Made by a program: the position numbers and the translations under genes. Positions 43,808 to 64,000 of a DNA stretch of 64,000 bases are shown in pieces (within the stretch, counting starts at the first letter, position 1; each line of letters opens with the position of its first letter). The DNA is from Anthoceros angustus (lineage: Eukaryota > Plantae > Anthocerotophyta): positions 1 to 64,000 of the forward strand of contig MU008228.1 of the NCBI GenBank assembly GCA_010909165.1. The letters run 5' to 3'. Below the pieces are notes generated by a model. That model was not told where the DNA came from. It was given only the letters and a program-made list of their open reading frames with translations, and did no database searches.

Positions 43808-43816
43808 TGGAACACT

Positions 43817-44861: not shown

Positions 44862-46388
44862 AAATGTGGAATGGGGTTTTGCGTCTAAAGACACAAGGAG
44901 GCCACATTTATCCTCTATGTCATTATAGTCCTAGGATTCGATCCCAAGGGAATGGTTTTGTGTCAAGATGTTCCAAAACTATGGACTCTAGCCCTACTAA
45001 AGTCAGTTCCTACCCAACCCTAACCAACTACCGTGTCCAAACCCACCACCGTGGTAAGTTCAGCCACCTCCGTGGTAGGCTCAGCCACCGCAGTAGCTGA
45101 TTCAATAACTGTGGCGGGCCCCACTCATCCTGCGCGTGCGCGCGACGCGACTGGCTATTTGACGCCCAGCTCCTCCGGCGTGGCCCTTAGGGATTATGGT
45201 CTCACACACACAGATTCGCACGTGCTCTAAGTCACACCCAAGGGTATTCACACCCAGAACTCACTGGTGGTACATACCATGGCTACGCACGCTGCGGCGC
45301 CTCACTCTTCACTGATTCGCTCTGACCCCACCATTTACTCCCCAATTCTCCTCATATGCCGGGCTCCCCAGACTCTCGCACTCACCACTTCCTAGACTCC
45401 TCTTTGCACAGCGACTCACTTCCCCTCTTCCTTCAAACACTCTCAGACACCACCACACGCAAGTTGCTCTCACCAATCCCTCTCTCGGGCCACACAGACC
45501 CTCTCCTGGGCCACACAAACCCCTCCCTTAGAGTTAGACACAATCCGGTCAGACAGCGGGTTGGGAAGAAGAGGGAGAAAACGCTGGACAGCATCAGGGG
45601 ATTTGCAGCGATCTCACCCTGGACTCCTGTGGAAATCTTCCCCTTCCGGCATACATAGCGCACCCGTCACCGCTATTCGCCCCAGAAGCGGAGCTTGGCC
45701 ACTCAACTCTCGACCATCCAGGGATCTCCCTGGCCCTCTTGTGACGAGAAGGCGGTGCACCGAATTAGTTCGTTATTGATCGGACGCCTCCAATCAACCT
45801 CGTGCGCAGATTCGACACATGGAAGCTCACACCTGAAATTGTCTATTAAGAGAGACACGAAAAAGGTCTCTTATACATCCAGCTACGGAACACCACAGCT
45901 CACTCTTCCTCAGTGTCTAAAAAAATTATGGCTAACCACAACGAGCGCACCTACCAATTCAGGTAACTACAGCTCCACAGGCCTTTCTAACACCTTATCC
46001 CCTAATCCAAGAAAAAGCCCCTGACCTATGATGCTGCTTCCCTCTAAAATCGCGGCGCCCGTCCATTATTCGCCGCCATGGGTGTTCCCCGCCTCCTACC
46101 ACGCCCGATCCGAACGATTCTCCTCAAAATCTCCACCTCACTTTCGCTACCCGTGGTTCCTTCACCTCTCCTGTGGGTGCCGCCTGCTCACGCCCCATGC
46201 ATGTTGTCCGCTTCTCATCAGCACACACCACAGTCGTTCCTCCCTCCACGCTCGGCCTCCGCCTCATCTCCTCAAGCACCACTTATGAGGGTATGCCCCA
46301 GCCCCGTCAAGGAACAATCAGACACCGTGGCGGTTAGATGTGCCCCGTGGTTACGCCCCCTCCCCTGTCCCAACAACCACATACACAT

Positions 46389-49300
46389 TTAGAGTGAGCA
46401 CCCGCTCACCATGCGAGCAAAGCAGGACCTAAGCATCCTCATCCGTGACGCGCGGCCTAATCGCCCTTCTCTGGAGGTCCTTACCTCTCTTCCGTGGACA
46501 ATCCGGATTGGCCTCCACGGAATCCAGGGAAGTTGCATCCCCGCCTGCAGCGTTCCTGTCGGTGGCTTCCCCCACCTCGGGTCCTCCTTCTGCGACGGTG
46601 GACGGTTTAGCCACCGTGGTAGCTGCTTCCTCAACGGTGGTCGCCGCCCATCGGTGGCCCTCTCCCCTCTTGGCTTGCCTCTCTTGACCCTGGCCCTAGC
46701 TCATCTCTCTCCCGCTTATACCTCTCCGCTAGTTTCTTGAACTTCTCCAGAGGCGCGAGCGTCTCCACCTGTTCTTGGACTCGCGAAACTTCATTCTGGA
46801 GCTCCTCAATTGTAGCATGCGCCCCTTTTACTTGGTTCACCAGGGCCTCCTATTGGGTGGACATAGCCCTCAGCTTCTCTTGTGTCTTGCTTAGTGCCTC
46901 CTCGTGACTCGCCATGTCCCTTGCCTTTTCTCGCCTCCAACCCCTCCAACTTTTCCTTGAGTAACTTCTCTTGTTGCCCCTGCACACTTAGATTCCCACA
47001 TTGGGCTGTCCCGGTGTCCATTCTCTTCCACAAAAAGCCCCGTACATGGGCTGTATCACTTGCCCCCGCTCCAGCTGGACAGGCCAATGGGGTATCTCCA
47101 AAAATGTCCTTGAGCTCCGGGAGAACTCGGCTTGAATTAACCTTCCTCCCTAGGGATTGGTCTGCAGCTGTCTCCTCATTCGTAAAAAACTCCCCAAGGC
47201 CATGCCGTCTCCGCTCAGGAGGGTAAGCCACCGTTCCCTTTCGCCTCCTTCCGCCTTCTGGCGGCCTTCGACTTGGTGATCCGAGGTGTGGTTGTGGGCT
47301 CCTCCTCCACTGCGGCTGTTCTCCCCTTTTTGGTCAACCCCCGTTCGGTCGTTGTTGCCTTCCTCTTCTTACTCCTTGTAGCCTCTCCACCTTTATCCGA
47401 ATCTTCTGGTGCCGCGAATTCCCAACTGCTGGAATCCTTCCCTGAATCTTCCTTGGACTCTTCTTCCTCTACCTTGAGCTCCCTGACCGATTTCCAGCTA
47501 TGAAGGGCAGACACAACCTCCAACTCAGTTAGGCATTCGGAATACGCAAACACATGAATCAGGATGGGCGAGATCAAAGAGGGGCGAGGGGAGGGGGAGA
47601 GCAAATTCGCCCTCTCTTCAGATGCCCTCTCAAAAATCATCCTCCCCCATTCAATCCGTGTGCCCTTAACTACTTTATGAAGGAAGACCAGGAAGTGGTC
47701 CGCCATGTGATCCAATTTCCTGCCCGCAGAAAACACAAAATCCACTTGGCCAACCCCACGAGTTGCACAGACGCGAGTTGGCGGGTCACCCATCCATTGT
47801 TAACCCGCACCTCCCTGTGCTTCATGATTGCTGCAGCCTTTTTAGGGTCTTCTTCCTCTCGGGGTCAATTACCAAACTCCCATCCTCCGATTCCTCTCGC
47901 CCATACACTGCCCGAAAGAGTCCCAAGTCCCAATTTAGTGGCCTCTTTCTCATGTCGCCCTCCTGCGACCTGGCCCTCAATTGGCGGGCGCATTCCTGCA
48001 CCAATGCTGGACTGTCATAACACCATTTCTTCTCCATGAAGCTCAATCCCAACTCCTGCACAAGGCCGCCAGCTCTAACCTTCCAGTGGTCCATATTGGG
48101 CCCTGCGTCAGAGATCTCTGCACCGCGGCAGGCGCCATCTCTCCGCCTCCGCCTGTCCGGTTCAAGCTCCTCAATGTATGCGCCTTTTACTTGGTTCACG
48201 GGGCCTCCTATTGGGTGGACAGCCCTCGACTCTTGTGTCTTGCTTAGTGCCTCCTCGCCTCCCGCTTGCAGTCCTCTGCTGCTTTTCGCTCTCCAACCCC
48301 TCCAACTTTTCCTTGAGTAACTTCTCTTGTTTGCACATAGATTCCCCTTGGGGTCATCCAGGTGTCCATTCTCTTCCACAAAAGCCCCGTACATGGGTGT
48401 ATCACTTGCCTCCACCTGGGCCAGATGATGGGGTATCTCCAAAAATGTCCTTGAGCTCCGGGGAGAACCTGGCTGCTGGAATTAACCCTTCCTCCCCTAG
48501 GGATTGGTCTGCAGCTGTCTCCTCATTCGTAAAAAACTCCCCAAGCAGTTGCGATTCGTCCTCCGCTCCAGCAGGAGGGGTAAGCCACCGTTTCCCTTTC
48601 GCTTTCCCCTCCTTCTCCCGCGGCCCTGCTGGCGTCTTCGACTTGGTGATCCGAGGTGTGGTTGTGGGCTCCTCCTCCACTGCGGCTGTTCTCCCCTTTT
48701 TGGTCAACCCCCGTTCGGTCGTTGTTGCCTTCCTCTTCTTACTCCTTGTAGCCTCTCCACCTTTATCCGAATCTTCTGGTGCCGCGAATTCCCAACTGCT
48801 GGAATCCTTCCCTGAATCTTCCTTGGACTCTTCTTCCTCTACCTTGAGCTCCCTGACCGATTTCCAGCTATGAAGGGCAGACACAACCTCCAACTCAGTT
48901 AGGCATTCGGAATACGCAAACACATGAATCAGGATGGGCGAGATCAAAGAGGGGCGAGGGGAGGGGGAGAGCAAATTCGCCCTCTCTTCAGATGCCCTCT
49001 CAAAAATCATCCTCCCCCATTCAATCCGTGTGCCCTTAACTACTTTATGAAGGAAGACCAGGAAGTGGTCCGCCATGTGATCCAATTTCCGGTTCTGCAG
49101 AAAACACAAAATCCACTTGGCCAACCCCACGAGTTGCACAGACGCGAGTTGGCGGGTCACCCATCCATTGTTAACCCGCACCTCCCCAGGCTTCATGATT
49201 GCGGCCGCTGCAGCTTTTAGGGTCTTCTTCCTCTGGGGGTCAATTACCAAACTCCCATCCTCCGATTCCTCTCGCCCATACACTGCCCGAAAGAGTCCCA

Positions 49301-49640
49301 AGTCCCAATTTAGTGGCCTCTTTCTCATGTCGCCTCCCCGCGACCGGCCTCAATTGGCGGGGCGATTCTCGCACTAATGCCGGACTCATAACACCATTTC
49401 TTCTCCATGAAGCTCAATCCCAACTCGCACAAGGTCAGCCTCTAACCTTCCAGTGGTCCATATTGGGCCACTGCATCGGGATCTCTGCGCAGCCCGAGGC
49501 GCCATCTCTCCCCCTCCGCCCCGTTCAAGCTCCTCAGGCTCTACTTCCAACCACGGTTCGGGGGGAGGATTCTCCTTCGAGCCCGCGATCCCCTCCTCCG
49601 CCTCGGACTTGCCTCACTTCTCCAGTTTGTCCGCCTTGAT
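46389..49640 (-). pseudogene. LTR-embedded accessory ORF (globular N-terminal domain, acidic/basic linker, coiled coil), partly duplicated and frameshifted
   Basis: ORFs 48402-49328, 47822-48442, 47215-47793 and 46631-46840. Homologous to the ORFs at 52793-53697. Confidence 0.75.
46801..49535. repeat. ~1,365-bp tandem duplication inside the LTR
   Basis: 46801-48165 matches 48166-49535. GCTCCTCA is present at all three junctions. Confidence 0.9.
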
Positions 49641-50274
49641 GCGTCGGGCCTTTTCCTCCGCCGCCGCTGTTGCCGACGCGGCGCCCACCCGTGCTCCTGC
49701 CACTAACGCCACCTGCACAGCAAAAGAAAACCCTCGTTCTATGCGCGGCTGCATGCGCGTGTCCTTCGCCCAGCTCCGCTAAAGTCCTGATCCAGTCACC
49801 AACTTCAGCTCGCTCACTCCTTGAAATCTGCAATTTGATCAGTGTGGTCTTCCTTCGATTCGCGCTCAGGCTTGCTCAACTTATCACAACCTCGGCTCCG
49901 CCACTAGGGTTGTTAACTCCCCCTGGCCTGTACAACCCATTCCCGGCCACCGTTGTGGAAGTAACCACCTCCCCACTTCTCTGCACCACTGTTGCCAGAT
50001 GAAGGGTACCCCTAGCATATATAGACACTTTTTATTTCTAAAAATGCCAAGGTCTAAGGACTTTCTAACCTGGCCTGACATACCCAGAGTCGAAGTCCAA
50101 GGATTAATTATGTATAAAAATATTATTGCCATGGCCAAGGATCACTTTTAGTATAAAAGGCCTTGCCCCGGACGATTTCTAAGCGTTCTATCACACCAAA
50201 CATTAGAAAAAACAAAAAAAATCATTTAAACCGACAGTTGAGGGAAGGGTTAGTGTACATGTGGTCTCCCACAC

Positions 50275-51459
50275 AAGCTGATAACACCAAGTACTGAGCC
50301 ACTAAATTCAAAAGTGATTGACTGGCAGACTGGTGAAGAAGGTATAGTGTTAATGGAGTTGTTTGGAGGGATCAGCGCTGGCTTGATGGCCATGCTACGT
50401 TGTGGAGTGAAGATACAAAAGTACGTGTATTGTGATGTGGATCCAATAGCTCAGCAGTGTCCGCAGTATCACGATGCAGACATGTGGCCCGAAAGTTGTA
50501 AGGCACCACTCAATTTCCAAAAGCAACTACCAGCAAATGTACGACACATTGGTTGGGATCACATTGAGAGTTTGGAAATGCCAGTGGATCTGGTTATAGC
50601 AGGATGGGAGTGTCAAGGGATGTCTGGCAGCAGGACGTGGACAAGGGCTGGATGATGCGCGATCTGCGCTATTCTTTGAGTTGGTTAGGATCATGAGGCT
50701 CATTCAGCAGAAGCAAGAGAAGCCATGTCGTTCTTTGAAAATGCCCCACCTGGTTTTGATAGAAGAACGCAGGTGAAGGAGAGTATGCATATGGTCCGTG
50801 GAATACTAGGTATGGAGATATACATGGATGCCACACAAATGGGATCCCTAGCTCATAGGCTGCGGAGTATCTGGACTAACCTTGCACCAACAAAGCATTT
50901 GATAGCATGTAGAGATGTCACAATCCTAGCGAAAAGATGTGTCAAGGAAGTCTTAACACCCGATAGGTTTCCAGCTGAAGTGCTGAGAAGAGAAGTGATG
51001 CCACAATTTGCAGTCAATGAAGTAGGGCAGCCCAGGGCTGCATGGCCAACGTTTGTGAGTGCCAGTAAGTCATTTGCTTTTGGATATCCAGGTGCACTAG
51101 GAAGAATTATGAACGCTGAGGGTGAGGATGAAGGAGAGCCTAGCCCCATAGAAAGGGAAATGGCTATGGGCTATGCTTGGGGACATACAGCTATTGAAGG
51201 TATCACGGTTAGAGAGCATTGTAGATTGATTGGACAAGCGTTAGATATGAATATGCTAATCTAGTTGTGTAGTACGTGCATTGTATATCAATGGAGCATG
51301 CCTGGTGACAAGAAAACTGTCAAAGCAAAAAGTGCTACTTATGGTAAATGCAAGAAGGGAGAGAAGATAAGTATCAGGAGCTTACGTTGGCATGAAACCA
51401 TGGTAGCTGAAGCAGTGAAAGAAGTAAAGTTTAAAGAATTCAAGTGGGATCAATCCTGA
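50275..51459 (+). pseudogene. C5-cytosine DNA methyltransferase domain (DNMT3-like, non-permuted) at the head of a Ty3/gypsy pol
   Basis: Motif I LMELFGGISAG, II YVYCDVD, IV DLVIAGWECQGMS, GLDDARSALFFELVRI (+1 frame), VI FFENA, VIII DATQMGSLAHRLRSIWTNL, IX EREMAMGY, X RLIGQALD. Two frameshifts and one TAG. Confidence 0.9.
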
Positions 51460-52103
51460 ACTCTCAATAGATGAGCAGCTGGCAATGCATAAGCTGTTGG
51501 AAGCTAACCGAGATGCATTCGCCTTTTCCATGAGTGATCTAGGCAAATGCACACGACGGAAGTTTTCTGTTCAGCTTACCAATGATTCACCTATCTACAG
51601 AAGGAGGCATAAGCTTAGCAAAGCGGAGTGGGATATCATGGAGGAAAGGTGTCAGGATTTGTTGAAAGCAGGATTAATCCGCATGTCCAAGTCACCATGG
51701 GCAGTAGCTACAGTGCTGCCTTGGAAGAAGAATGAAGAAGGACACCGGGATGATAGCCGCATGTGCGGGGATTATCGCCCCTTGAACGCTGTAACCATCA
51801 TGGATGGATATCAGATGCCCACTCCTAACAAAATTTTTGATGTAATAGGAGAAGCTGCTTACTTTTCGACGCTAGATTTGAGGCAAGGCTTCAATCAAAT
51901 TGAAATCGCTGAAGAGGACAAGGGGAAAACAACGTTTTGGAGACGCGATGCGAAGTATGAGCGGAATCGTATGCCGTTTGGCATGAAGAACTCTGTAGTG
52001 GAGTTCCAGAGAACAGCCGATGAAATGTCTGCAGATTTGTCGCAAGTGAGGTGCTATGTAGACGATGTTCTTATCTTCACCAAAACATTTGAGGATGAGC
52101 TGG
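51449..52103 (+). mobile_element. Ty3/gypsy RT, N-terminal half, of the methyltransferase-bearing element
   Basis: INPELSIDEQ...LLEANRDAFA, SKSPWA, RMCGDYRPLN, YFSTLDLRQGFNQI, RMPFGMKNS, CYVDDVLIF. Confidence 0.95.
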
Positions 52104-55100
52104 TGTGGACCACGGACTCTCCCCGGGGGTAGGAAATGAGTTAGGTTTTGTTTTTTTTCGTAGGAACGGAGTGCAAAATAAGGCGGAAATGAAGAAATAA
52201 GCCGGACTGCACTCCGGAGTAAGGACTCCGGAGTGGGTGGAAGGACTCTGGAGCACACTCCGGAGGCACTCCAGACCACGCACCGGAGTATTGGGATAAG
52301 TCCGGACCACACTCCGGAGGAGGACGGGATAAGTACGCCAAGTAAAGTAACTTAGAAGTTGGGGCGTGATTTAGCAGCCACGTGGGCGGATCTTGAGTGG
52401 TGAGCGGGCATGCAGCGAGACCCGGGACGCAGGGTTGCGATGGGTTATAGCGGTATTCACGCTCAGTCACGATTCGGTAATGAGTTAGAGTCTGCAGCGT
52501 AAGGCGAGTAAGCGGGCGTGGGCGGGAGTAGGCCATGCGAGACCTCGGCGATTCACAGGCAGCGAAGGACACCCCCAGCTCGCGACTACTCCCGTCGCGA
52601 CACGGAGGGTAGACCATTTCTCTTTGTGACCTCACGACGATTTTCGCAGTCTCTCGCGCTCCATCACCCCGCTCTTTGGCGCTATCTCTTTGAGCGCTCA
52701 GGCACCTTCTCATGGCTCACCTTGTGGTTGGAGCGGAGCAGCGAAGAGGGAGCATAATAACGCCATGACAGCGGAGCAAGAAGAAGGCGGCGATGGGACC
52801 CAAGAAGGCCGCGGAGGTATGGGAGCCATGGCGCCTAGTGGAGCGCAACATTGTCACCAGGAGATACCCCGACTTCGGACCTTGGCTGGAGGAGGCAGAG
52901 GACTTGGTGGAGAAGTGGCACGTGGACATCTTCAACACGGTGTGGACATTCGACAGCGTCACACTTGTCAGGGAATACGCCCGGAAGATGCTGGCTGTAG
53001 CCAACAAGGAGGTCTGCTCCAAAAGCTTGAGGGAGGACCCTAGGAGGTGGACCGTGGAGGTCCTAAGGGCAGTGTACAACCGCCCGGTGGAAGAAATTGG
53101 GGGCGTAGTTCCGGAGCCTCTCAAGGTGAGGGGGAAGGTAGAACCGGCGAAGGCGGCGATGCTGCGACCAGGGACGCAGCGGTCGTCAAATGGCTGGCTG
53201 ATGTCAGACCTGCTGGATAGGCGGGTGAGGGCAGTGGCCATTGGAACATGCTCACCAAGATGGATCACCTTGGTGATAATCTTTTGGTGTTCCTGCACGC
53301 CCTGCTGCGGGGCAAACGGGCCGACTGGGGACGTATTATCCTCGCCCGGATCAGTCAGGAGGCCAGAAAGCTACGGAGCGAAAAGCCGCCTCCGTTAGCA
53401 CTCTCCCCATTCCTCATTCATGTGTGGGGACACCTCAACCTCCTAAAGGAGGGAGAAGAGGAGGCGCTGACTCGTTTACGTCCGGGCGAGCTCGGCTGCT
53501 GCCCTATGGCGGGTTCTTGGGCGCGAGCGTCGCCGATGTGGCTCCTCCGTGGTGCTCCGTCCAGTAGCAGGACATCCGCCTCGGGACCCGGAAGGAGGCG
53601 GTATATCCTCCCATACCTCTCGGGCGGCGGGGTCCGCTCACGGCGGATAGAGTCCGAATCCTCCCAATCATCGTCCTCCGGGCCGCTTTGGCCTTAGGAG
53701 GCGGGCCTCCGTCTCTGCGCCTTCGCCTTCAGCTCCGCCTCCGGCAGGGCTACCAACGCGGAAGGTGGCTCCCACCAACGAAGCGCCAAGGAGCGTACCA
53801 GTGCCTCTGCCCCTACCCACGGAGTGGCAGGAGGCAGAGGAAGCATGGGAGGCGGAGAGGGGCGCCGCCCGAGGCGGGCCAGCAGCCACGAGCCTATCTG
53901 TCTCCGACAAGGAGAGGGAAACGTGCCAGCTCCCGGACCCCCTCGCCGCCACCAAGCCCAAAACGAAGACGGGCGGCGAAGGAGGTAGCGGCCAAACGGG
54001 CCAAGGAAGTGGAAGGGCCGGACCAGGGCACCCAGGACCTGAGGGTCCTGATTAGGTCCGGAGAGCCGAGTCCGGACTCACTCCGGACCGCAGTCTGGCA
54101 GTCCTTAGCGGACCGAGAGATGCCCGCACCCACGACGGACTTCTTGGGTGCCTCACTAGCGGCGGCCGTGGAAGGCACACGACGAGTTTTGGCTACCATC
54201 ATGGACGGTATGCTTTGGGGTCTCTGTGGGACTGCAGAGAAGACCCAGGAGGTGGAGGCAACAAGGAGGCGCATGGTGCTCCTCTAGGAGCAGGTGGAGG
54301 CGGCCCAGGAGGCGAAGAAGAAGGCAAAATCCCTCGCTCGAATCGAGGAGGGAAAGCGCCGGGAGGCAGAGCGGGAGGTCTGGTCTATTCAGCAAGACCG
54401 GACCAAGGTCCTTCAATTTGTCTGAGCAGTGAGCGAACCTGAGGCCAAGCCCGGCAGAGGACCTCTGCAGGCGGAGGCCGAGGCTTAGAGGCAGGAGCCA
54501 GGCTCGAGACCTAGAGGCGGCTAGGCGGGAACAACACCAAGCCGCGGAGGCTTAGGTGAAGACGGCTGAGAAGCGGCGGCTAAGACCGACCGAGATCACT
54601 ACCGGCGGGATCGAAACCGGTGGAGGGAGAGCGAGGGGCAGCCATGGCTAACACAAGGCCCAGGCAGGAGCGAGCGGGCGAGCGTGTGAGAGAAGAAGGA
54701 GGCCAGCAACAAGGAGATGGAGGATCTCCGGACCCAGTTGTGTGCAGTGGAAGAACAACGGCAGGAGATGGAAGACCGCAAGGAGACCTTGGAGCTGCAG
54801 CTCCAAGATACAATCGAGCGGAACGGGGCTCTTCGGGGCATGATCGCGGATCACGAGCGAGAGATAGAGCGACTCCAGCTCTGTTGGCGGGTCGAAGAAG
54901 TAAGGCGGTGGAATAAGGAGCAGGACATCGCCGAAATGGAGAGGAACCTGGATGAAGCGCGAAATCGGGCAGAGTTGCCGGACCGCCTGGGAAGGGAGAT
55001 GGCGGAGCTTCAAACCAGAATGAACGGAGGAGCAAGGGCCTTGGACGCAGAAAAGAAGCTGCTGGTCCAGTTGAGAAAGGCGGAGGGGGAGCATTGCGTC

Positions 55101-56867
55101 ATGGCGAGGCGGTAGCGAAGCAGCGGAGGCTGGGCAGCGAGGCAGCCAGGCGGAGGTTGCAGGAGGTAACGGAGGCCGCCCTTGTGGCCTCGCGAGACTC
55201 GGCCCGGCTCCAGCTGACAAACTTGGCAGGAGAGACGGACAAGCAAGCCGGACATCACGCTCAGCTTCCGGAGCACCTATGGCGAAGGGAGTAATCGGGT
55301 GCTTAGGGTTTAGGGAGGAGGCAATCCAACAAATTGACTCGGATTTTGCCTACTACCACGCCGAGCTCCTCAAGGCGTTGGAAGTTTCTCAGCGCCCGCT
55401 GCAACTGGATGGACCTCCGGAGGGGTCAGAGGGAGTGGAAGGGGAAGAAGGACATGGGGACAACGCGGGGGCCTTGGTGGCCTTTTTTGGTGATGAGGGC
55501 AGTGGTGGAGAAGAGCCCCAGGAGGAGCAGGACGCGGCCAATGTAACGGCCCTTGAGGTAAGTCCGCCGCAACCAGCCAGGGAGGATAGGGACGAGGGCC
55601 CCGAAAGAGGTGAGGAGGGAGAAAACCAACCGGACCCTAGCCAGGGAAGGGGCCAGGTGGCGAGATGGACCCTAACAGAGGCGGTCCGAGATTGGGGTCG
55701 GGACTTGAGGACGGACCACAGTAATAGTCGGACCTTGAGGTCGAACCCGAAGGCAGACCGGACCACGAGGTCCGGACTCGAAAATAAGGCAAACTCACGA
55801 AGATCGGACCCCGGAGTCGAGACCGGACCCCGAGGTCCGGACTCAGGAGGAGAGCCATTCCCGACGTGCTCAGGAGGAGCAATCAACCGGTGGTCCTACA
55901 GGGCGGGGACCCACTCGAAGGCCAGGAGAGGAGAATGTGGTGGTTACCGCGGTTGTCAGACCGCCGCCGGTAGCCCAACCTGACAGGGTCTCGGGAAGGG
56001 TAAGGGGTCCCGCTTCGCGGATCATCCGATTGGGTGCGCCGCAGCAAACAGGGCAAGGAGTGGGGTCATCGGCGCCGAAGCGGAACCAAGGGCATTCCCA
56101 GGCCCACCGCCGACGACGGAGATAGGGGGAGGGGCGTAAGATGATAGGCGGCCGATTAGGGCATACTGAGCTGGCCACCCGCTCAAAATAGGAGTGTAAT
56201 AAAGACGCCGACCTTGGGCGTAGTATAAGAGGGCCGAAGTTGCCCTAGTAAAGTATCTTTCTCTTGGTGTTGATGTCGCGTTTCCTTGCAGACCCTTGTG
56301 CGTCTTCTTGCTAACGTGAGTCAACAGTGGCACTGCCCGGCTCGGGAGGCGATCGAGTCACGGTAGCGGACCCTAACGTGTGGTGGTGTGTGCAGGGACG
56401 AACGACCGGGGACCCTTGCTCGTCAGGCGGGCGGCGTTAGGCGGACGGGCGTGTGGCCGGAGGAACTCGGGAGGGCATGTAGAGCCGGACGAGAGGCTCG
56501 GACAGCGGAGTCCATTCACCTTCATTTTCCCAAAGGACGATGAGTGATGCGAGAGATGTGGAGATTTTAGCATGAGTGATCTTAGATGAGTGTAACGAGA
56601 GGGGTAAGAGGGACGGACTAGAAGTATGAGGGACGTTGGAGATGATCTGAATGACGAGTCCTTAAGCGTTTGGCCTCCAAGGCACATTCGGTGGACATCA
56701 CGGAGTTAATAGTAGCGGAAGCAGTAGCGTATGTGTTTGAGTCAAAGCGGTCGAGAAAAACGATTGAATCGACAAGCGGGCCCATCATTCTCTTGGGAGC
56801 GGACTCCTTACTACAACGACATGGGATTGTGCGCGCCCGGCTGGCCATCAGTGAAAGTCGCGCCACA
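52104..56867 (+). mobile_element. 4,764-bp solo-LTR-like insertion (TGTGG...CCACA) with a 5-bp TSD
   Basis: Flanked by GCTGG (52099-52103) and GTTGG (56868-56872). Removing it restores the RT frame FEDELAELTKVFQRMREWDLKGHPKKC. No gag, pol or terminal direct repeats inside. Confidence 0.88.
52793..55700 (+). pseudogene. Accessory ORF inside the solo LTR (globular domain, low-complexity linker, coiled coil), frameshifted
   Basis: ORFs 52793-53398, 53248-53697, 54717-55115 (heptad-rich) and 55279 onward. Aligns by eye with the minus-strand ORF at 48402-49500. Confidence 0.75.
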
Positions 56868-57697
56868 GTTGGCAGAGTTGACCAAAGTATTTCAGCGAAT
56901 GCGGGAGTGGGATTTAAAGGGGCACCCAAAGAAATGCACGGTTGGATACCAAAAAGTGTTGTATTTGGGCCATGAAATCACTCCGGCAAGTATAGCTCCT
57001 TATTTAGCCAAGGTTGATGCCATATTGAAGCTGCTTAGGCCAACATATATCTCTAAGTTGAGAACATTTTTAGGTTTGGTAAGCTATTACAAGAAGTACA
57101 TTCCAAATATGAGTGCATTGGTTCATCCACTGACAATGTTATTGAAGCAAGGACAATCATGGATATGGGAACAGGAGCAAGAGATGGCATTAATGGACTT
57201 AAAAGACAGACTGTCCAATAGTCCGGTGCTGCGGAGGCCTGATTTTAGCTTGCCATTCTTGTTGTATACTGATTGGTGCAAGCTGGGACTTGGTGCAGTG
57301 CTGGCACAGCAGTTTGCCGATGGAGAGGGACATCCGATTGCCTATGCTAGCGGTAATGCACGAATCTTTGCAGGCCAATTATGGTTCCTATGAAGGAGAA
57401 GCTGGCGGTTTAAGTGTCTTGCATTTTCGAGTATACCTTCATGGTAGGAAGTTTGAGTTAGTGACCGATCACCAACCCTTGTATTGGTTGATTACCAATA
57501 CTAAACTCGTAGGTAAACTGGCCAGATGGGCCATGATCTTACAGGAGTTTGATTTTGTGGTTACACATCGAGCAGGAAAGTTGCAAATGAATGCTGATGT
57601 GTTGTCACGTAATCCGGTGGCTAGCAGCAGCGATTTCACTGAAGCTCAATGGGATTGGACGGATGAAGTGCATCAAGTCATCTCAAGTCGCGCTTAG
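56868..57697 (+). mobile_element. RT C-terminal half, connection domain and RNase H of the methyltransferase-bearing element
   Basis: HPKKC...YLGHEI, LRTFLGLVSYY, PVLRRPDFSLPFLLYTDWCKLGLGAVLAQ, FELVTDHQPL, LARWAMILQEFDF, NADVLSR. Confidence 0.95.
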
Positions 57698-57919
57698 CCA
57701 TGTTGACACTCATCGAGCTTGATGAAGAACTATATGTTATGCAAACAGCTTGTATACGAGATGCTTGGAAGGATGCTCCACTGCTTGCTTATGTGCGGGG
57801 TCAATTTCAGCGATTCAAGCAGACAATTTGAGCAGGGCCAAAAGATACATGTGGGAGGCAGGACAATTACAGCAAATGGCGGGGAAGAAAATGGTGCCAG
57901 CACACGAGCGAGCAACTAA

Positions 57920-59030
57920 TTAAATCAGTGCATGAGGAGTTAGGGCATTTTGGTGTCAAATGAACCTACAACATGCTCGCACCTAAGTATTGCTGGGTTG
58001 GCATGCACAAAATGGTTCAAGATGTGGTCGCCAAATGTGTGCACTGCGATCACATCAAAGCTCGATTCACAGCCAATGATACGATCTTGCATTCTTTGCC
58101 GATCAAAGGCTTGTTAAATCGCTGGGGGGTTGACTTGTTACCTGAATTGCCCAAGACTTCCAAAGGCAATAAGCACATCATGGTGATGGTGGAGTATTTT
58201 AGTAAATGGATAGAAGTTGTCAGATTCCGGAGAAGACCAAGAAGAACACTACCTGCAGCCTTCCCCGCAGCAGGTGTGTTCTTTCCAGGTTTGGCACATG
58301 TGCTGAGGTCGTCACCGATCAAGGTTCGGAGTTTCAAGGTGATTTTTAGCAACTCATGGATAGGGCCTTAATTGATCATCGTGGCACAAGCCGTGATCAC
58401 CCACAGGCCGATGGCTTGGCTGAACGCAATGTGCAAACCATTAAGAGGGCTTTGCGGAAGTACTGTTTGCAGAAGGGCTCCAAAGATTGGGATGACATGT
58501 TGCCCTATCTGCTACTTGGTTATCGGGTCAGCAAGCAAGCTGCGTTAGCCAACTTTTCACCATACTTTTTGTTGTTTGGCCGTCACCCACAACTACCTAA
58601 TGTCAAGCAAGCTGCTATGGAGCAGCCCTTGTCTTGGACTGACCTGGATAATTGTGTCAAAGAGCTGCAGAAGCGTGCTACTTTGTTCCAACACATCATT
58701 CCAATGGCCATGGACAATCTCGCCATTGCTCAGCATAGGGACAAATTGCACTATGCGCACACACGTGGAGGGAGTTGGAAACCCAAGGCTCGTCGTTTTG
58801 AACCAAGTGATTATGTGTACCTTGCTCAACAGCCTGTTGACACATTGGATGTAGGCACGGGTCGCATCACCATGCGAGTGGTTGCTGTACGTGATTCTGG
58901 CGTTGTGGAGTTGGAAGGCTCTGATGGACGTACATGGCATGAGCATTTGAAGAATTTGGCACCTTGTCATCTGCCTAATTTAGATCCAGAGATTCACCCC
59001 ACTATGTGGCGACCGCCCCCGGATTTAGCA
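57920..59030 (+). mobile_element. Integrase (HHCC zinc finger, DDE core, C-terminal extension)
   Basis: HEELGHFGVK*TY...CVHC, WGVD, VTDQGSEF, HPQADGLAERNVQTIK, SPYFLLFGRHP. Confidence 0.95.
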
Positions 59031-59178
59031 TGTGAAATTTGCAGCCGGGTGGACGATGAAGATGCTATGCTGCTATGTGACCATTGCAACAGAGGCTTTC
59101 ATCTCTTCGCTTGCGCCCTAATCAAGTTCCACTGAAGCTTGGTATTGCTCAACTTGTTCGGCCCGTCGTGCAGATTAA
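59031..59178 (+). other. PHD finger at the integrase C-terminus
   Basis: CEICSRVDDEDAMLLCDHCNRGFHLFAC, then after frameshifts QVP and WYCSTC, giving the full Cys4-His-Cys3 pattern. Confidence 0.9.
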
Positions 59179-59345
59179 TCTCTGCAGTTGGGTGCTGTTG
59201 TCAGCCATCTTGTTTTGTGTTTGTACTCCGGTCATTACCTTGCACGGTGCTCGACCTGCTGTACTTGTGTGTTGTGCTGGCTTTTATTTGTTTTGCTTAT
59301 CCTGCCGCCGCTTTTGCTGTGGCCCTTTCGGACAGCTAGGAGGGG

Positions 59346-60917
59346 AAGTCTAGGCTACAGTCTATGCAAGTGTGTGTAGTTTGCTTTTGGTTTGTAGCAT
59401 TCTTGCTAGCTTGTAGTAACTAGTCTTTGTGGTATTCAGGACGCTTAGTGGCACTCGCACGACAACTGTCATGAGTCGTCATAGAACTAGGTTACTCATC
59501 CTTAATTAGGTATTTGTGTAACGGATGTCTTGTCATCATGTATTGGAGCCGATGCAGCAATGTATGGCAGCCCTTATTCTCGGGCAAAGGTAAAGGTGGG
59601 GAGTTTTAGTGGGTGAGGGAGTTCTTCCCAAGTCCCACATAACTGCGATGGTATCTAGGCACGCATCAGATGACCTCGGGAAGAGTAAAGTCTCTTCTGT
59701 TGGGATGATAATGATGTGTAACATAGGGGAATCGAACCCTTCTTGAAGATTTCTCCTGTGGTTGTTTTGATTTATTTTCAAAATACCAAATTAAAAAAAA
59801 AAAAATCATAGCTGTACGCATGTGTACGGTATGAAAATAGGTCATAGCCATAAGCTTCATGTGCGAGCAACAAGTAGCAAAGTAGGAAAACGGTCCTGGA
59901 AGACGAGACGAGACGAGCCCCGCCTTGAAAAGGCTGAGATTCAACTTGTACAACAAGCTATTGCTGGTTTGGGTCTGAAGGCAATAAACGCGGTGTGTTG
60001 TGTGTGCAATATGCGTGTGACGGATTGGTCATTGCCGGCCGTCACGTGAAAGGTGTGGATATTGCAGTGCAGGCAGTTAGATCGAAGTTGTTTTGAAGTC
60101 TAGTCTGCAGTCTATGCAAGTGTGTGTAGTTTGCTTTTGGTTTGTAGCATTCTTGCTAGCTTGTAGTAACTAGTCTTTGTGGTATTCAGCTTAGACGCTT
60201 TCATCGACAACTCATGAGTCATAGAACTAGGTTACTCATCCTTAATTAGGTATTTGTGTAACGGATGTCTTGTCATCATGTATTGGAGCCGATGCAGCAA
60301 TGTATGGCAGCCCTTATTCTCGGGCAAAGGTAAAGGTGGGGAGTTTTAGTGGGTGAGGAGTTCTTCCCAAGTCCCACATAACTGCGATGGTATCTAGGCA
60401 CGCGTACTCGGATGACCTCGGGAAGAGTAAAGTCTCTTCCTGTTGGGATGAATCTGATGTGTAACATAGGGGAATCGAACCCTTGTCAAGATTTCTCCCG
60501 GTTGTTTTGATTTATTTTCAAAATACCAAATTAAAAAATCATAGTCAGACGTATGTATGGTATGAAAATAGGTCATAGCCATAAGCTTCATGTACGAGCA
60601 ACAAGTAGCGAGGCGGGCAGCAATGGAAGGAGGACGATCGGCCGAGCCTTGAAAATAGATTCAACTTGCAACAACAAGCTATTGCGGTTTGGGTAAGGCA
60701 ATAACGCGGTGTTGTGTGTGCAATATGCGTGTGTGGATTGCTGACTGAAGCGGTCATGGCCAGCGGTGGCGTGGTGTGGATATTGCGGTCGATAGATCGT
60801 TGTTTTGAAGTCTAGTCTGCAGTCTATGCAAGTGTGTGTAGTTTGCTTTTGGTTTGTAGCATTCTTGCTAGCTTGTAGTAACTAGTCTTTTTGAGACTTA
60901 GTGGCACTCGCATGACA
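59346..60917. repeat. Tandem ~740-bp LTR-like units (TGTCATG...CATGACA): a partial copy, then 59467-60209 and ~60212-60917
   Basis: The block GAAGTCTAG...AGTCTATGCAAGTGTGTGTAG recurs at 59346, ~60095 and ~60806. Terminal inverted repeats are present, and the right end coincides with the Harbinger truncation. Confidence 0.8.
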
Positions 60918-61560
60918 ACTAGGATGAGTGCAACACACATTAATGAATTTTTGTCAGCATAACATATGCCTTGTAAGACACCAGAATGAAAATCATGGCG
61001 ACACCAGTATGCAACCGGGTTATCTGTCTTGTTAGGCTGTGCAGCCAGATCGATGTGAGAACTACTGTCTATAGCTCCAACCACGTTGGGAAGACCCGTG
61101 AGTTGCCTGAACTTCAATGTTGTTTGCTCTAATTACATCCCTGTAGGCCAATGAACCAATTTGAGAAATAACTTTTCCTGATTGCTTAGTATCTCTGAAA
61201 TGATAATAGTCTATTGAGCCACAGTCGAAGCTCCTACCCCATACATATCTGCAACAATATGAGGCGGCAACCCCCTAGCAAGACGATGGAGGACCATGGC
61301 AACTGCATGTTGGTGTTGAAGAGGCTCCCTAATAGATGTGTGAAGCAAGTACGGGCGTAGCATATCAACCAAAACCAGAAAGTTAGGACATGACATTCTA
61401 TAAGCAAATCGCCATTGAGCATCCCGCATCTTAGCTCCATTACTATGCCACGCTCGCATATGCATATTTCTCCATAATGTGATTTGCTGAGGAAACTTCC
61501 ACCATACCCTCTTCCGCTTCCTAGATGATAATTGTTCCAAAACTCCACTCATTGCGAATA
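60918..61560 (-). mobile_element. PIF/Harbinger DDE transposase, N-terminal part, truncated
   Basis: FAYRMSCPNFLVLVDMLRPYL...AVAMVLHRLARG...YGVGASTV and GLPNVVGAIDSSSHI...YWCRHDFHSGVLQGIC. The frame is cut at the HP(G/S) motif. Confidence 0.92.
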
Positions 61561-62255: not shown

Positions 62256-64000
62256 TCACGGTCGACCTTTACAACTGCAACAACCAGCTGCGAATCGATG
62301 CACACGGTACCCGTCCCTTACCACAATGTCTCTATTTTCAAGCCTTGACATGATTTCCGTGGAACTGTGGCAGTCGCTGCACATGCGTAGATTCTTCGTT
62401 ACCACGAGAGTTGTCCCACTCGGAGTGTTCAAGAGACCAAACGCAAGAGCTAGCTTCTCAGCATGCCCACAAAGCGCATCTTCCTTTTCCTTCTCAGAAA
62501 GTGGCTTCAACACCAATTTTGTGAGAGGTACGTGGCCTCCTTCCTGTTTCACACGAGCATTGGTGGCCTCTACCTTCAGCGCAAGATCTTCTCTCCTTTC
62601 TCCCACCAGAAATGTATGTACCTGCTTATTCACCTCGATGGTCGCCACAGCAGGTTTCTTGTTAGCTCCTGCTACCCTTCTCCGTGTTTCAATCCTGTCT
62701 ACATCGCTCCACCTCCCTGCATCTGCATACGCATTCGCCATGAGCACATATGCAGGCGCATCCTGGGGGTCCAGCGTAACAATGCTTTCAAAACACCAAA
62801 TCGCCCTGTCTAAATCACCGTGACTTTTGCAGGCATTCAACAAAGACCTCAACCCCACAACACTCTTTTGGCCCTCTAATGACAACAGCATCTTCTCAGC
62901 CTCATCTAAATGGCCCGCACGCCCAAGAAGATCAATCATGCAGGTGTAATGTTCGATAGTAGGTTTGATGCCATGCTCTTCAGCCATGGAATCAAAGTGC
63001 TTGCAACCCTCGTGGACTAGTCCTTCATGGCTGCATGCTGCTAGAAGGCAAGTAAAAGTAGCACCGTCAGGCTGAACGCCGGCCACTAACATCTCCTCAA
63101 AACAAGCTAGTGCTTTCTCACCATCATCACAAGTACCATACCCAGCTATTAGGGCATTCCATGTCACCACATCCTTCGTGGCCAAGCTTTCGAAAACTCG
63201 GCGAGCATCTCTCAGTGCACCACATTTTGCATACATGTCCACCAAGCAGGTGCCCACCAGTATGTCATCCAGCAGTCTCTTTTCGACAATCTGAGAGTGC
63301 AGCTGCCTGCCCTTCTGTAAGGCACCAGTGCTTCCACACGCCTTCAGAAGGCAAGCAAAAGTAACATGGTTCGCTACTATCAGACCCTCCTGCTCCATTT
63401 GTCCATACAAAACAAGCGCCTCATGGCCAAGTCCTTGCTGTGCATACCCAGCAATCAGCGCTGTCCATGTCACCACATCCTTTGTGGCCATGCTGTCAAA
63501 AACCTGGCGTGCATCTTCCAGTTCACCACATTTTGCATACATGTCCACCAGGCAGGTGCCCACCACTACGTCATCCAACAGTCCTCTTTCAACAATCTGT
63601 GAGTGCAGCTGCCTGCCCTTCTGTAAGGCGCCAGTGCTTGCACAGGCCTTCAATAGGCAACCAAAAGTAACATGATCAGCCAAAATGAGGCCCTCCTGCT
63701 CCATTTGTCCATACAGAACAAGCGCCTCATGACCGAGCTCTTCCTGGGCATACCCAGCTATCAGGGCATTCCACGTGACCACATTCTTTGTCTTCATGCT
63801 GTCAAATACCTGGCGTGCATCTTCCAGTTCACCACATTTCGCATACCCAGCAACCAGCACCGTCCATGTCACCACATCCTTCGTGGCCATGCTATCAAAA
63901 ACCTGGCGTGCACTGGTCATTTCGCCACATTTTGCATACATGTCCACCAGGTGTAACAAACAAGTTAGTGTGCCTCTGCACCACATCACAGTGCACTTTC
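62256..64000 (-). CDS. Fourth PPR-E1-E2-DYW:KP(GRP) paralogue; 5-prime end lies beyond the window
   Basis: 577-aa open frame with S-SS-P-L-S-P-L-S-P2-L2-S2-E1-E2, KKPAVATIEV, HAEKLA, CSDCH, CSCKGRP. An apparent frameshift lies near 63955. Confidence 0.93.
   Translation of the reverse strand, partial: KCTVMWCRGTLTCLLHLVDMYAKCGEMTSARQVFDSMATKDVVTWTVLVAGYAKCGELEDARQVFDSMKTKNVVTWNALIAGYAQEELGHEALVLYGQMEQEGLILADHVTFGCLLKACASTGALQKGRQLHSQIVERGLLDDVVVGTCLVDMYAKCGELEDARQVFDSMATKDVVTWTALIAGYAQQGLGHEALVLYGQMEQEGLIVANHVTFACLLKACGSTGALQKGRQLHSQIVEKRLLDDILVGTCLVDMYAKCGALRDARRVFESLATKDVVTWNALIAGYGTCDDGEKALACFEEMLVAGVQPDGATFTCLLAACSHEGLVHEGCKHFDSMAEEHGIKPTIEHYTCMIDLLGRAGHLDEAEKMLLSLEGQKSVVGLRSLLNACKSHGDLDRAIWCFESIVTLDPQDAPAYVLMANAYADAGRWSDVDRIETRRRVAGANKKPAVATIEVNKQVHTFLVGERREDLALKVEATNARVKQEGGHVPLTKLVLKPLSEKEKEDALCGHAEKLALAFGLLNTPSGTTLVVTKNLRMCSDCHSSTEIMSRLENRDIVVRDGYRVHRFAAGCCSCKGRP

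What the first reader, a model, noticed from the sequence alone, without database searches (positions are those of the whole stretch)
50275..59178. Ty3/gypsy retrotransposon encoding its own DNMT3-like cytosine methyltransferase upstream of RT, with a PHD-tipped integrase
Seen: C5-MTase motifs I, II, IV, VI, VIII, IX and X in non-permuted order, with the catalytic Cys kept in a WECQ variant of PCQ. A ~65-aa linker follows, then the RT entry INPELS..EQ; a single-base shift (EFKW/INPE) separates the frames. After excising the solo LTR, RT, RNase H, integrase and PHD follow colinearly. Knowledge: plant DRMs are circularly permuted, so this is not a captured DRM; MTase-bearing retrotransposons are known from dinoflagellates and charophyte algae but are not a standard feature of land-plant LTR elements. 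Inference: an MTase-RT-RH-IN-PHD polyprotein that could methylate its own cDNA or insertion site. This copy is decayed (frameshifts, TAG at 51262, TGA at 57961).
Basis: partly seen in the sequence, partly recalled or inferred. Interest (0 to 1): 0.92.

Follow-up and report, generated by a model that had tools for sequence, protein, structure and literature searches.

The report
Dead methyltransferase-carrying gypsy retrotransposon copy
This is a broken, front-truncated copy of a jumping gene (Ty3/gypsy retrotransposon) whose own protein includes a DNMT3-like DNA cytosine methyltransferase and a histone-reading PHD finger. The element type is already known from the green alga Klebsormidium, and here it turns up in a land plant.

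Summary
Window 50275-59178 (+) reads colinearly as DNMT3-like C5-methyltransferase, linker, RT, RNase H, integrase, PHD. A 4,764-bp solo LTR (52104-56867) interrupts the RT.

The methyltransferase (MTase) belongs to the element. Both halves match a family of at least 414 protein clusters (best E 9e-26). In the MTase tree and in the RT tree the window falls in one well-supported lineage with the order PR-MTase-RT-RH-IN(-PHD).

- That lineage holds uninterrupted single ORFs from metagenomes (2188 and 2358 aa), Closterium proteins and Klebsormidium nitens GAQ80425.1. I take the last, by species and domain order, to be one of the published KnitGypsy-Dnmt3 copies.
- It also holds a near-complete copy in the liverwort Calypogeia fissa and a remnant in Marchantia.
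- A larger sister lineage carries the MTase between RNase H and integrase.

The family profile and an AlphaFold model both hit DNMT3A/B/C first.

- WECQ is a family polymorphism (Glu 28, Pro 20 of 51).
- The MTase holds two further frameshifts.
- The 5.4-kb LTR upstream belongs to a different minus-strand gypsy that cuts off gag-PR.

This copy is dead, and enzymatic function is untested. The scan has noted the same family on other DNA of this genome (15 notes). Verdict: new member of a known kind, of moderate interest.

The parts
50275..50628 (+). MTase N-terminal half: motif I (FGGISAG), motifs II-III, motif IV (AGWECQGMS, catalytic Cys kept). It starts directly at the end of the neighbouring LTR.
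   Evidence: Translation. hhalign against family profile A1 gives E 6e-25 over columns 5-113. Weak direct PDB hits to DNMT3C/3B/3A.
50627..50740 (+). Middle piece of the MTase read in a different frame (GLDDARSALFFELVR block, between motifs IV and VI). It is bounded by two frameshifts.
   Evidence: Three-frame translation. It fills the gap between profile columns 113 and 149. The family consensus has the same G.RS..F..L.R block.
50725..51261 (+). MTase C-terminal half: motif VI (FFENA), motif VIII (AHRLRSIWTN), target-recognition region, motifs IX-X (EREMAMGY...LIGQALD).
   Evidence: phmmer finds 414 clusters, best E 8.7e-26. hhalign E 1e-37.
51262..51264 (+). In-frame TAG that ends the MTase reading frame.
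51265..51484 (+). Linker between MTase and RT, with a frameshift near 51460-51485.
   Evidence: The distance from MTase end to RT Pfam start is about 158 codons here and about 134 in intact P0085.
51485..52103 (+). Reverse transcriptase, N-terminal part through the YVDD motif.
   Evidence: Pfam RVT_1 5.4e-18. tblastn with P0183 residues 1347-1566, 42% identity.
52104..56867 (+). Nested foreign insert: a GC-rich 4,764-bp solo LTR (TGTGG...CCACA ends, flanking repeat GCTGG/GTTGG) that splits the RT. It is not part of the MTase element.
   Evidence: Junction sequences. GC 0.60-0.65. It shares only a protein-level ORF similarity, in opposite orientation, with the LTR at 44865-50273.
56868..57697 (+). 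Rest of the RT and the RNase H domain. One frameshift near 57355-57370.
   Evidence: Pfam RT_RNaseH_2 1.3e-17 and RT_RNaseH 1.9e-12. tblastn with P0183 residues 1554-1822.
57760..59030 (+). Integrase: H2C2 zinc finger, DDE core and C-terminal region. In-frame TGA at 57961, frameshift near 58265, further damage in 57700-57960.
   Evidence: Pfam Integrase_H2C2 1.9e-4. tblastn with P0183 residues 1866-2324, 36-51% identity. Stop confirmed.
59031..59178 (+). C-terminal PHD finger. The first five zinc ligands are in frame. The last Cys pair (WYCSTC) follows a frameshift and a TAA.
   Evidence: Pfam PHD 1.4e-5 over profile positions 1-26. Comparison with family PHDs. Frames.
44865..50273 (-). Context, not part of the element: the 5.4-kb 5' LTR of a different minus-strand gypsy. 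That element has gag at 44761-43817, PR at 43807-42971 and RT at 42512-40691, with no MTase. This LTR ends the MTase element at 50274 and removes its gag-PR.
   Evidence: TGTGG...CCACA ends, with a TGG-starting primer-binding-like site 4 nt beyond the LTR on the minus strand. Pfam aspartyl protease on the minus strand. RT similarity on the minus strand at only 25-36% identity, with about 550 bp between PR and RT.

Best explanation
Window 50275-59178 is a dead, 5'-truncated copy of a Ty3/gypsy LTR-retrotransposon lineage of streptophytes. In this lineage the single gag-pol ORF encodes, in order: protease, a DNMT3-like C5 cytosine methyltransferase, reverse transcriptase, RNase H, integrase and a C-terminal PHD finger.

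Shown:
- The MTase is an inherited domain of the polyprotein, not a neighbouring host gene. It co-segregates with the RT in trees.
- It sits in the same position in uninterrupted natural ORFs.
- Its catalytic residues are invariant across the family.
- It evolves under purifying selection.
- The lineage is the one holding a K. nitens protein that I take to be a published KnitGypsy-Dnmt3 copy. It also includes Closterium and liverwort copies.

Inferred, about 35-40% likely: in active copies the MTase methylates the element's own newly made cDNA, or the DNA at the integration site. The PHD finger, which resembles readers of unmethylated histone H3K4, tethers the integrase to non-promoter chromatin. 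The new copy would then arrive with a host-like methylation state.

This particular copy does nothing. It has about seven frameshifts, at least three in-frame stops and a solo LTR inside the RT, and it has no gag-PR.

The confidence given (0.85) is for the identity and architecture, not for the inferred mechanism.
For: Anatomy:
- Colinear match of 50266-59105 to residues 924-2324 of intact P0183.
- Pfam RT, RNase H, integrase and PHD.
- MTase halves against the family profile, E 6e-25 and 1e-37.

MTase belongs to the element:
- P0085 is a single 2188-aa ORF with zf-CCHC, protease, DNA_methylase, RVT_1, RNase H and integrase.
- P0183 is a single 2358-aa ORF with protease, DNA_methylase, RT, RNase H, integrase and PHD.
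- P0041 and P0070 show protease followed by MTase; P0041 and P0033 also carry the gag zinc knuckle upstream of the MTase.

Trees:
- In the MTase tree, one branch (SH-aLRT 98) separates all RT-RH-MTase-IN rows from the 35 rows that hold all nine MTase-RT rows, including the window.
- In the RT trees, the MTase-RT rows form one side of a branch with support 99 and 100/99.
- The window's RT is 46% identical to P0085 and 53% to P0182.

Hosts:
- Closterium sp. NIES-53, -54 and -65.
- K. nitens GAQ80425.1.
- Calypogeia fissa, with a 643-codon open protease-MTase stretch that passes the Pfam DNA_methylase cut-off.
- A Marchantia polymorpha remnant, OAE24016.1.

DNMT3 affinity:
- The profile hits DNMT3A at 1.5e-22, DRM at 1e-13 and M.HhaI at 3e-9.
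- The AlphaFold model has pLDDT 94.7, and its top 47 Foldseek PDB hits are DNMT3A/B/C at TM about 0.8 by target.

Constraint:
- The motif IV Cys, the ENV Glu, and Arg179 of the R-x-R pair are invariant in 51 sequences at about 35% identity; the ENV Asn and Arg181 are in 50 of 51.
- Between two intact copies, pN is 0.158 and pS is 0.767 in the MTase.

PHD: the nearest solved relatives are KDM5 PHD1, PHF12, CHD4 PHD2, KAT6A, BAZ2A/B, ATXR5, PHF21A, AIRE and UHRF1. From my own knowledge, these bind the unmodified H3 tail.
Against: - No gag, protease, LTR pair or primer-binding site of this element is visible in the window. Its classification as an LTR element rests on relatives.
- No enzymatic activity has been shown for this lineage. 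The K. nitens domain gave no methylation in yeast, though the authors called this inconclusive because human DNMT3B also failed (PMC5890265, section 10).
- More than half of family members, including this copy, have Glu instead of the canonical Pro before the catalytic Cys. The effect of that change is unknown.
- No sequencing run was listed for this DNA, so neither expression nor methylation could be examined.
- CpG depletion of the remnant (o/e 0.54) is no stronger than in the neighbouring PPR genes. It says nothing specific.
Confidence: 0.85

Rival explanations
1. Chance adjacency. A pseudogene fragment of a host DNMT3 gene happens to lie next to an unrelated gypsy pol, and the two were never one protein.
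For: In this copy a stop (51262) and a frameshift separate the MTase from the RT. The upstream part is missing.
Against: Intact ORFs elsewhere carry the same order with a comparable linker. Both the MTase and the RT of the window fall in the same architecture-defined clade. The MTase has no introns and is colinear with P0183 across the junction.
Confidence: 0.02
2. The MTase domain is a real part of the element but no longer methylates DNA. It would act as a DNA- or SAM-binding or host-factor-recruiting module, or act on RNA. The common Pro-to-Glu change before the catalytic Cys would reflect this.
For: Glu replaces Pro in 28 of 51 family members. The K. nitens domain produced no methylation in yeast (PMC5890265). 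The authors raised RNA methylation as a possibility for the LINE-borne DNMT in the same paper.
Against: The catalytic Cys, the ENV Glu and Arg179 of the R-x-R pair are invariant, the ENV Asn and Arg181 are in 50 of 51, and motif I is well conserved. Members with Pro and with Glu are mixed in one family. Purifying selection fits either role. The yeast negative is uninformative because DNMT3B also failed there.
Confidence: 0.2
3. The MTase acts mainly on host chromatin or on competing transposons rather than on the element's own cDNA. It might, for example, spread CG methylation around insertions or silence rivals. The PHD would guide the enzyme rather than the integrase.
For: The PHD belongs to a class that in host proteins, including DNMT3 partners, reads unmethylated H3K4 (own knowledge). 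Both domains are kept together in two deep lineages with different domain order.
Against: The PHD is always at the C-terminus of the integrase, far from the MTase. In one lineage RT, RNase H and integrase separate the two domains. One sublineage (P0085, P0177, P0180) keeps the MTase but lacks the PHD.
Confidence: 0.15

Closest known systems
KnitGypsy-Dnmt3 of Klebsormidium nitens (de Mendoza et al. 2018, PMC5890265)
   Same: It is a gypsy pol ORF with an intronless, non-permuted DNMT3-like domain. K. nitens GAQ80425.1 (P0088) has the MTase followed by the RT, and it falls on the window's side of the MTase tree. Purifying selection on the MTase is reported there (Ka/Ks < 0.2) and seen here.
   Different: The host here is a land plant. 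The MTase is under 45% identical to any database cluster representative. The paper's text does not mention a PHD finger and describes DIRS-like repeats. Terminal repeats could not be examined in this truncated copy. That GAQ80425.1 is one of the published copies is my inference from species and architecture, not a check against their sequences.
Sister lineage with the order RT-RNase H-MTase-integrase-PHD (public metagenomes and assemblies, e.g. P0008, P0024, P0151)
   Same: It has the same DNMT3-like MTase family (GW[EP]CQ, EN, AHR.R.[YF]W.N signatures), the same integrase and a PHD tail.
   Different: The MTase sits after RNase H instead of before the RT. The two orders are separated by well-supported branches in both the MTase and RT trees. 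This order is the commoner one among the hits (about 68 against 8). Its hosts are not identified.
Catalytic domain of animal DNMT3A/3B/3C
   Same: It is the best sequence-profile match and the best fold match. It shares the motif VIII stretch (AHR.R.[YF]W.N) and the C-terminal LLGR-type motif.
   Different: No PWWP or ADD domain is seen in the family proteins whose upstream parts were scanned, and in this copy the upstream part is missing. The target-recognition region is longer. Trp-Glu or Trp-Pro stands in place of Ser-Pro before the Cys. The domain is embedded in a retrotransposon polyprotein.
Plant DRM2
   Same: It is a DNMT3-derived plant de novo methyltransferase. The family profile matches it partially, at 1e-11 to 1e-13.
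   Different: DRM matches only through its C-terminal block carrying motifs I-V (chain residues about 225-354), as expected for a circular permutation. The element's domain has the unpermuted order I to X. It is therefore not a captured DRM.
SymbioDIRS-Dnmt3 of dinoflagellates (PMC5890265)
   Same: It is a retrotransposon pol with a DNMT3-like domain. In that case de novo CG methylation was shown in yeast.
   Different: It has a DIRS backbone with a tyrosine recombinase rather than a gypsy backbone with a DDE integrase. The authors consider it an independent acquisition.
Chromoviruses and PHD-bearing retrotransposons (cited in PMC6673714: Gao et al. [quoted passage not shown] 2005)
   Same: A chromatin-reader domain is attached to the integration machinery.

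Membership tests
Ty3/gypsy (Metaviridae) LTR retrotransposon | Pol domain order RT, RNase H, integrase, with the integrase after the RT | tested here: met
   Pfam hits in that order on one strand. Colinear with P0183.
Ty3/gypsy (Metaviridae) LTR retrotransposon | Flanking long terminal repeats, primer-binding site and target-site duplication | tested here: not met
   No direct repeat pairs flank 50275-59178. The 5' end is cut at 50274 by another element's LTR. This reflects truncation of this copy. Relatives were not resolved either: L006 is a perfect 8,262-bp concatemer and L008 shows no LTR pair.
Ty3/gypsy (Metaviridae) LTR retrotransposon | gag with zinc knuckle and aspartic protease upstream of pol | tested here: not met
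   Absent from this copy. Present upstream of the MTase in relatives P0085, P0041, P0070, P0183 and Calypogeia L008.
Streptophyte Gypsy-DNMT3 lineage (KnitGypsy-Dnmt3) | DNMT3-like domain inside the gypsy pol ORF, inherited together with the RT | tested here: met
   Congruent, well-supported splits in the MTase and RT trees. K. nitens GAQ80425.1 lies on the same side.
Streptophyte Gypsy-DNMT3 lineage (KnitGypsy-Dnmt3) | Open, selectively maintained MTase reading frame | tested here: not met
   This copy has two frameshifts and a TAG in the MTase. At family level the feature is met: intact ORFs and pN/pS about 0.2.
DNMT3-type C5 cytosine methyltransferase | Motifs I to X in unpermuted order, with the motif IV Cys, motif VI Glu-Asn and motif VIII Arg-x-Arg | tested here: met
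   FGGISAG, AGWECQGMS, FFENA and AHRLRSIW are present in order. The same positions are invariant or nearly so in the family. The canonical Pro before the Cys is Glu here.
DNMT3-type C5 cytosine methyltransferase | Closer to DNMT3 than to DNMT1, DNMT2, DRM or bacterial enzymes | tested here: met
   Profile against PDB and Foldseek. No phylogeny with host plant DNMT3 sequences could be made, because none was obtainable as a tool sequence.
DNMT3-type C5 cytosine methyltransferase | DNA cytosine-5 methylation activity | not testable with these tools
   The only published assay of this lineage was negative but inconclusive (PMC5890265).
Plant DRM | Circularly permuted motif order (VI-X before I-V) | tested here: not met
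   The order is I-IV, then VI-X. DRM chains match only over profile positions 5-141.
PHD finger (unmodified-H3 reader class) | Cys4-His-Cys3 ligand pattern | tested here: inconclusive
   The first five ligands are in frame. The last Cys pair follows a frameshift and a stop, and the His-to-Cys spacing is off by one. The pattern is complete in relatives. Histone binding is not testable here.

The most novel reading that the evidence does not exclude
Land plants still harbour, and may still mobilise, a retrotransposon lineage inherited from streptophyte algae. That lineage would write 5-methylcytosine on its own DNA and read unmethylated H3K4 through its integrase tail. If so, part of de novo methylation in bryophyte-grade plants would be transposon-encoded. 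Host 'true' DNMT3 genes and these elements may also have exchanged the domain. The evidence here shows the lineage in a land-plant window, in Calypogeia and in Marchantia, and shows selective constraint in algal or metagenomic copies. It shows neither activity nor any intact land-plant copy.
Probability: 0.2. Interest if true: 0.7.

Novelty: new member of a known kind. Interest (0 to 1): 0.45.

Why it matters
Retrotransposons that carry their own DNA methyltransferase turn the usual host-silences-transposon picture around. Published examples are confined to dinoflagellates and a charophyte alga.

This window, together with the Calypogeia and Marchantia loci found here, places the charophyte lineage inside land plants.

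The database survey shows that the family is large (at least 414 clusters at 50% identity). It comes in two domain orders and usually pairs the methyltransferase with a PHD finger of the unmodified-H3 reader type.

That gives epigenetics and transposon researchers named, publicly available genomes, and naturally intact ORFs, in which to test what a transposon-encoded DNMT3 does.

For genome annotation there is a practical warning. Fragments of these elements are deposited as 'hypothetical protein', and could be miscounted as host DNMT3 genes.

Tried and rejected
- Pfam on the window's MTase pieces, even at E<=10, found no methylase. I treat this as a false negative of broken fragments, because the profile and phmmer searches are decisive.
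- A word-indexed protein search with the 179-aa C-terminal half found nothing at 98-313 aa. By the tool's length rule, this is uninformative.
- I looked for this element's gag-PR, LTR pair or other copies inside the window and found none.
- I considered the upstream 5.4-kb LTR as this element's 5' LTR and rejected that. It abuts minus-strand gag-PR-RT of another family and has no partner downstream.
- DNA similarity between the two large LTRs is absent. Only an oppositely oriented ORF is similar at protein level.
- No sequencing run was listed, so read laying was not used and expression is untested.
- CpG depletion is not discriminating.
- The 123-aa ORF after the PHD in metagenome locus L006 has no counterpart in the window and no Pfam family.
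- dN/dS proper could not be computed. One pair is identical and in the other the synonymous sites are saturated, so only pN/pS is reported.
- The ESM Atlas look-up added only 'Eukaryota, commonest Streptophyta'.
- Literature searches for a land-plant Gypsy-DNMT3 found none. The library is incomplete, so this is not proof of absence.
- Hosts of the RT-RH-MTase-IN lineage (for example assembly GCA_006365115.1) could not be named with the tools.
Full report
WHAT IS THERE

On the plus strand from 50275 to 59178 the three reading frames together spell one pol-type polyprotein.

The first part is a C5 cytosine methyltransferase:
- 50272-50628 holds motif I (FGGISAG) and motif IV (AGWECQGMS).
- A short piece at 50627-50740, in another frame, holds the GLDDARSALFFELVR block.
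- 50725-51261 holds FFENA, the AHRLRSIWTN stretch and the C-terminal EREMAMGY...LIGQALD block.

Pfam does not recognise these broken pieces. Against a profile of 51 family domains, however, the two halves score hhalign E 6e-25 and 1e-37 and cover profile columns 5-113 and 149-328. phmmer of the C-terminal half against 1.84 billion proteins returns 414 clusters at E<=1e-3, the best at 8.7e-26.

Downstream come a TAG at 51262, a linker, a frameshift, then RT (Pfam RVT_1 5e-18), RNase H, integrase and a PHD finger. The stated TGA at 57961 is in the integrase frame.

The RT is split by a GC-rich 4,764-bp insert at 52104-56867. The insert has TGTGG...CCACA ends and a GCTGG/GTTGG flanking repeat. 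Insert plus one repeat copy is 4,769 nt, which leaves the two RT halves in one frame.

The whole stretch 50266-59105 is colinear with residues 924-2324 of an uninterrupted 2358-aa polyprotein, P0183. I count about seven frameshifts and at least three in-frame stops.

SURROUNDINGS

The 5.4-kb unit at 44865-50273 that abuts the MTase is not this element's LTR. Immediately to its left, on the minus strand, lie:
- a TGG-starting primer-binding-like site;
- a gag-sized ORF and an aspartic protease (Pfam);
- an RT only 25-36% identical to the plus-strand one, with about 550 bp between protease and RT and so no room for an MTase.

It is the 5' LTR of a different, minus-strand gypsy. That element's arrival, or a later deletion, removed gag and protease of the MTase element. 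No partner LTR and no other copy of the MTase element exist in the window.

The flanking ORF at 62256-63989 is a PPR-E-DYW protein. A PPR gene at 29605 has its best named relatives in lycophytes, ferns, liverworts and mosses, at no more than 50% identity. The window therefore comes from a land plant without a closely related annotated genome. A hornwort is my guess only.

IS THE MTASE PART OF THE ELEMENT?

Yes. Among the hits, two domain orders occur:
- The commoner order is RT-RNase H-MTase-integrase-PHD.
- The rarer order is the window's: protease-MTase-RT-RNase H-integrase(-PHD).

The rarer order is seen in uninterrupted single ORFs:
- P0085, 2188 aa, with zinc knuckle, protease, DNA_methylase, RT, RNase H and integrase.
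- P0183, 2358 aa, with the same domains plus a C-terminal PHD.

In a tree of 151 MTase domains, one branch (SH-aLRT 98) puts all rows of the commoner order on one side. On the other side are all nine rows of the window's order, with 26 fragments. Fragments on that side have protease, or in one case only the gag zinc knuckle, upstream of the MTase. RT-RNase H trees give the same split, with support 99 and 100/99. The window's RT is 46% identical to P0085 and 53% to P0182. MTase and RT have therefore been inherited together, and chance adjacency is excluded.

WHO CARRIES IT

Names attached to cluster members place the window's lineage in the following hosts:
- Closterium sp. NIES-53, -54 and -65;
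- Klebsormidium nitens (GAQ80425.1);
- the liverwort Calypogeia fissa (CAM6104272.1);
- Marchantia polymorpha (OAE24016.1).

The Calypogeia locus is a near-complete gag-protease-MTase-RT-RNase H-integrase-PHD element. It has a 643-codon open protease-MTase stretch that passes the Pfam DNA_methylase cut-off and reads GWPCQ at motif IV. The Marchantia locus is a remnant with gag-protease and half an MTase.

De Mendoza et al. (2018) described KnitGypsy-Dnmt3 in K. nitens as a DNMT3-related domain inside a gypsy pol under purifying selection (PMC5890265). A 2026 preprint refers to it as the streptophyte 'Gypsy-DNMT3'.

I found no paper reporting it in land plants, but the library is incomplete.

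First-stage notes of this scan mention the same kind of element on other pieces of this genome. Fifteen notes hold the words 'DNMT gypsy', and two others describe gag-protease followed by the MTase. I did not check those.

WHAT KIND OF MTASE

The family profile hits DNMT3A at 1.5e-22. It hits plant DRM at 1e-13 to 1e-11, only through the block that the DRM permutation moves to the C-terminus. It hits M.HhaI at 3e-9.

An AlphaFold model of the P0085 domain (pLDDT 94.7) has DNMT3A/B/C as its top 47 Foldseek hits in the PDB, at TM about 0.8 by target.

The motif VIII stretch and the C-terminal LLGR-type motif are DNMT3 signatures (alignment).

Across 51 domains at about 35% identity, the catalytic Cys, the motif VI Glu and Arg179 of the Arg-x-Arg pair are invariant; the motif VI Asn and Arg181 are in 50 of 51. 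The residue before the Cys is Glu in 28 and Pro in 20. WECQ is thus a common family variant and not a peculiarity of this copy.

Between two intact copies (P0085 and P0177), non-synonymous difference in the MTase is 0.158 per site. The synonymous value is saturated at 0.767. That places the MTase between gag-protease (0.204) and RT-RNase H (0.107). The domain is maintained by selection.

THE PHD

In the window, the first five zinc ligands are in frame. The last Cys pair follows a frameshift and a TAA.

The finger is present at the very C-terminus in both deep lineages and is lost in one sublineage.

Its nearest solved relatives are KDM5 PHD1, PHF12, CHD4 PHD2, KAT6A, BAZ2A/B, ATXR5, PHF21A, AIRE and UHRF1. 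From my own knowledge, these read the unmodified H3 tail. The assignment is an inference.

PHD fingers in retrotransposons are not new in themselves (PMC6673714).

HOW IT PROBABLY WORKS

Shown: the anatomy, the inheritance, the DNMT3 affinity and the constraint.

Inferred: in active copies the MTase methylates the element's cDNA or its integration site, and the PHD steers the integrase to H3K4-unmethylated chromatin. I give this reading about 35-40%. Two rivals remain:
- a non-catalytic or RNA-directed role, about 20%;
- action on host chromatin or on rival transposons, about 15%.

The only published assay of this lineage was negative but inconclusive (PMC5890265).

This copy itself is inert.

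VERDICT

The element is a new member of a known kind, extended to land plants, and not a new kind.

No sequencing run was listed for the stretch. Expression and methylation remain untested, and read laying was not used.

Noticed in passing
window 40376-50273 (minus strand): A second, unrelated gypsy element lies on the minus strand. It has a 5.4-kb LTR (44865-50273) that contains a 1.37-kb internal tandem duplication and an ORF with no Pfam family. It is followed by a primer-binding-like site, gag, protease and an RT that is itself tandemly duplicated (40376-41290 and 41292-42206, 92% identical).
   Followed up: partly
window 52104-56867 and 44865-50273: The two large LTRs share no detectable DNA similarity. 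They do carry a homologous ORF of unknown function in opposite orientations (about 46% identity over 67 codons by tblastx). A scan note reports a similar solo-LTR-like insert inside the RT of another DNMT-gypsy copy elsewhere in this genome. That could mean duplication after insertion, or a target preference.
   Followed up: partly
public proteins P0008, P0024, P0151 and others; locus L004: There is a larger sister lineage of gypsy elements with the MTase placed between RNase H and integrase (RT-RH-MTase-IN-PHD). It accounts for about 68 of the classifiable hits. Its hosts are mostly unnamed metagenomic eukaryotes. One NCBI assembly (GCA_006365115.1) could not be named here.
   Followed up: partly
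L006:1-18357: The metagenome contig carrying intact P0183 is a perfect head-to-tail concatemer of an 8,262-bp unit, about 2.2 copies at 100% identity. It is either a collapsed assembly of LTR plus internal region, or a circular or tandem form. A 123-aa ORF with no Pfam family follows the PHD in each unit.
   Followed up: partly
L008:7382-13902 (Calypogeia fissa, GCA_965154635.1): This is a near-complete land-plant copy of the same lineage. It has a 643-codon open protease-MTase stretch (GWPCQ), while gag carries nine stops. An unrelated gypsy RT-integrase lies head-to-tail on the opposite strand at 13882-15903.
   Followed up: partly
L007:8752-10645 (Marchantia polymorpha, LVLJ01002688.1): The annotated 'hypothetical protein' OAE24016.1 is a remnant of this element family (gag-protease and the C-terminal half of the MTase). 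Such fragments could be mistaken for host DNMT3-like genes.
   Followed up: partly
protein P0204 (EukProt, Tetraselmis striata): This is a Copia-type polyprotein (RVT_2, gag_pre-integrase) that also carries a DNA_methylase domain distantly related to this family (E 2e-16). It fits the mention of Copia-borne DNMT3 in PMC12344493.
   Followed up: no
window 59337-60893: Just downstream of the PHD there are two to three tandem copies of a unit of about 745 bp (86-100% identical). Whether they belong to the 3' end of the MTase element is unknown. Minus-strand ORFs at 60824-61552 have no Pfam hit.
   Followed up: partly
window 62256-63989 (minus) and 29605-31839 (plus): These are PPR-E-DYW editing-factor genes, with DNA-level paralogues at 30.5-37.7 kb (about 87% identical). 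They mark the window as land-plant nuclear DNA.
   Followed up: partly
loci L003 and L009 (ENA samples ERZ19026226 and ERZ19031371): Intact 2188-aa and 2327-aa polyproteins from two different metagenome samples are identical over their shared length, apart from about 0.2% non-synonymous difference in RT-RNase H. This suggests a very young, possibly active element in an unidentified eukaryote. This sublineage lacks the PHD finger.
   Followed up: partly
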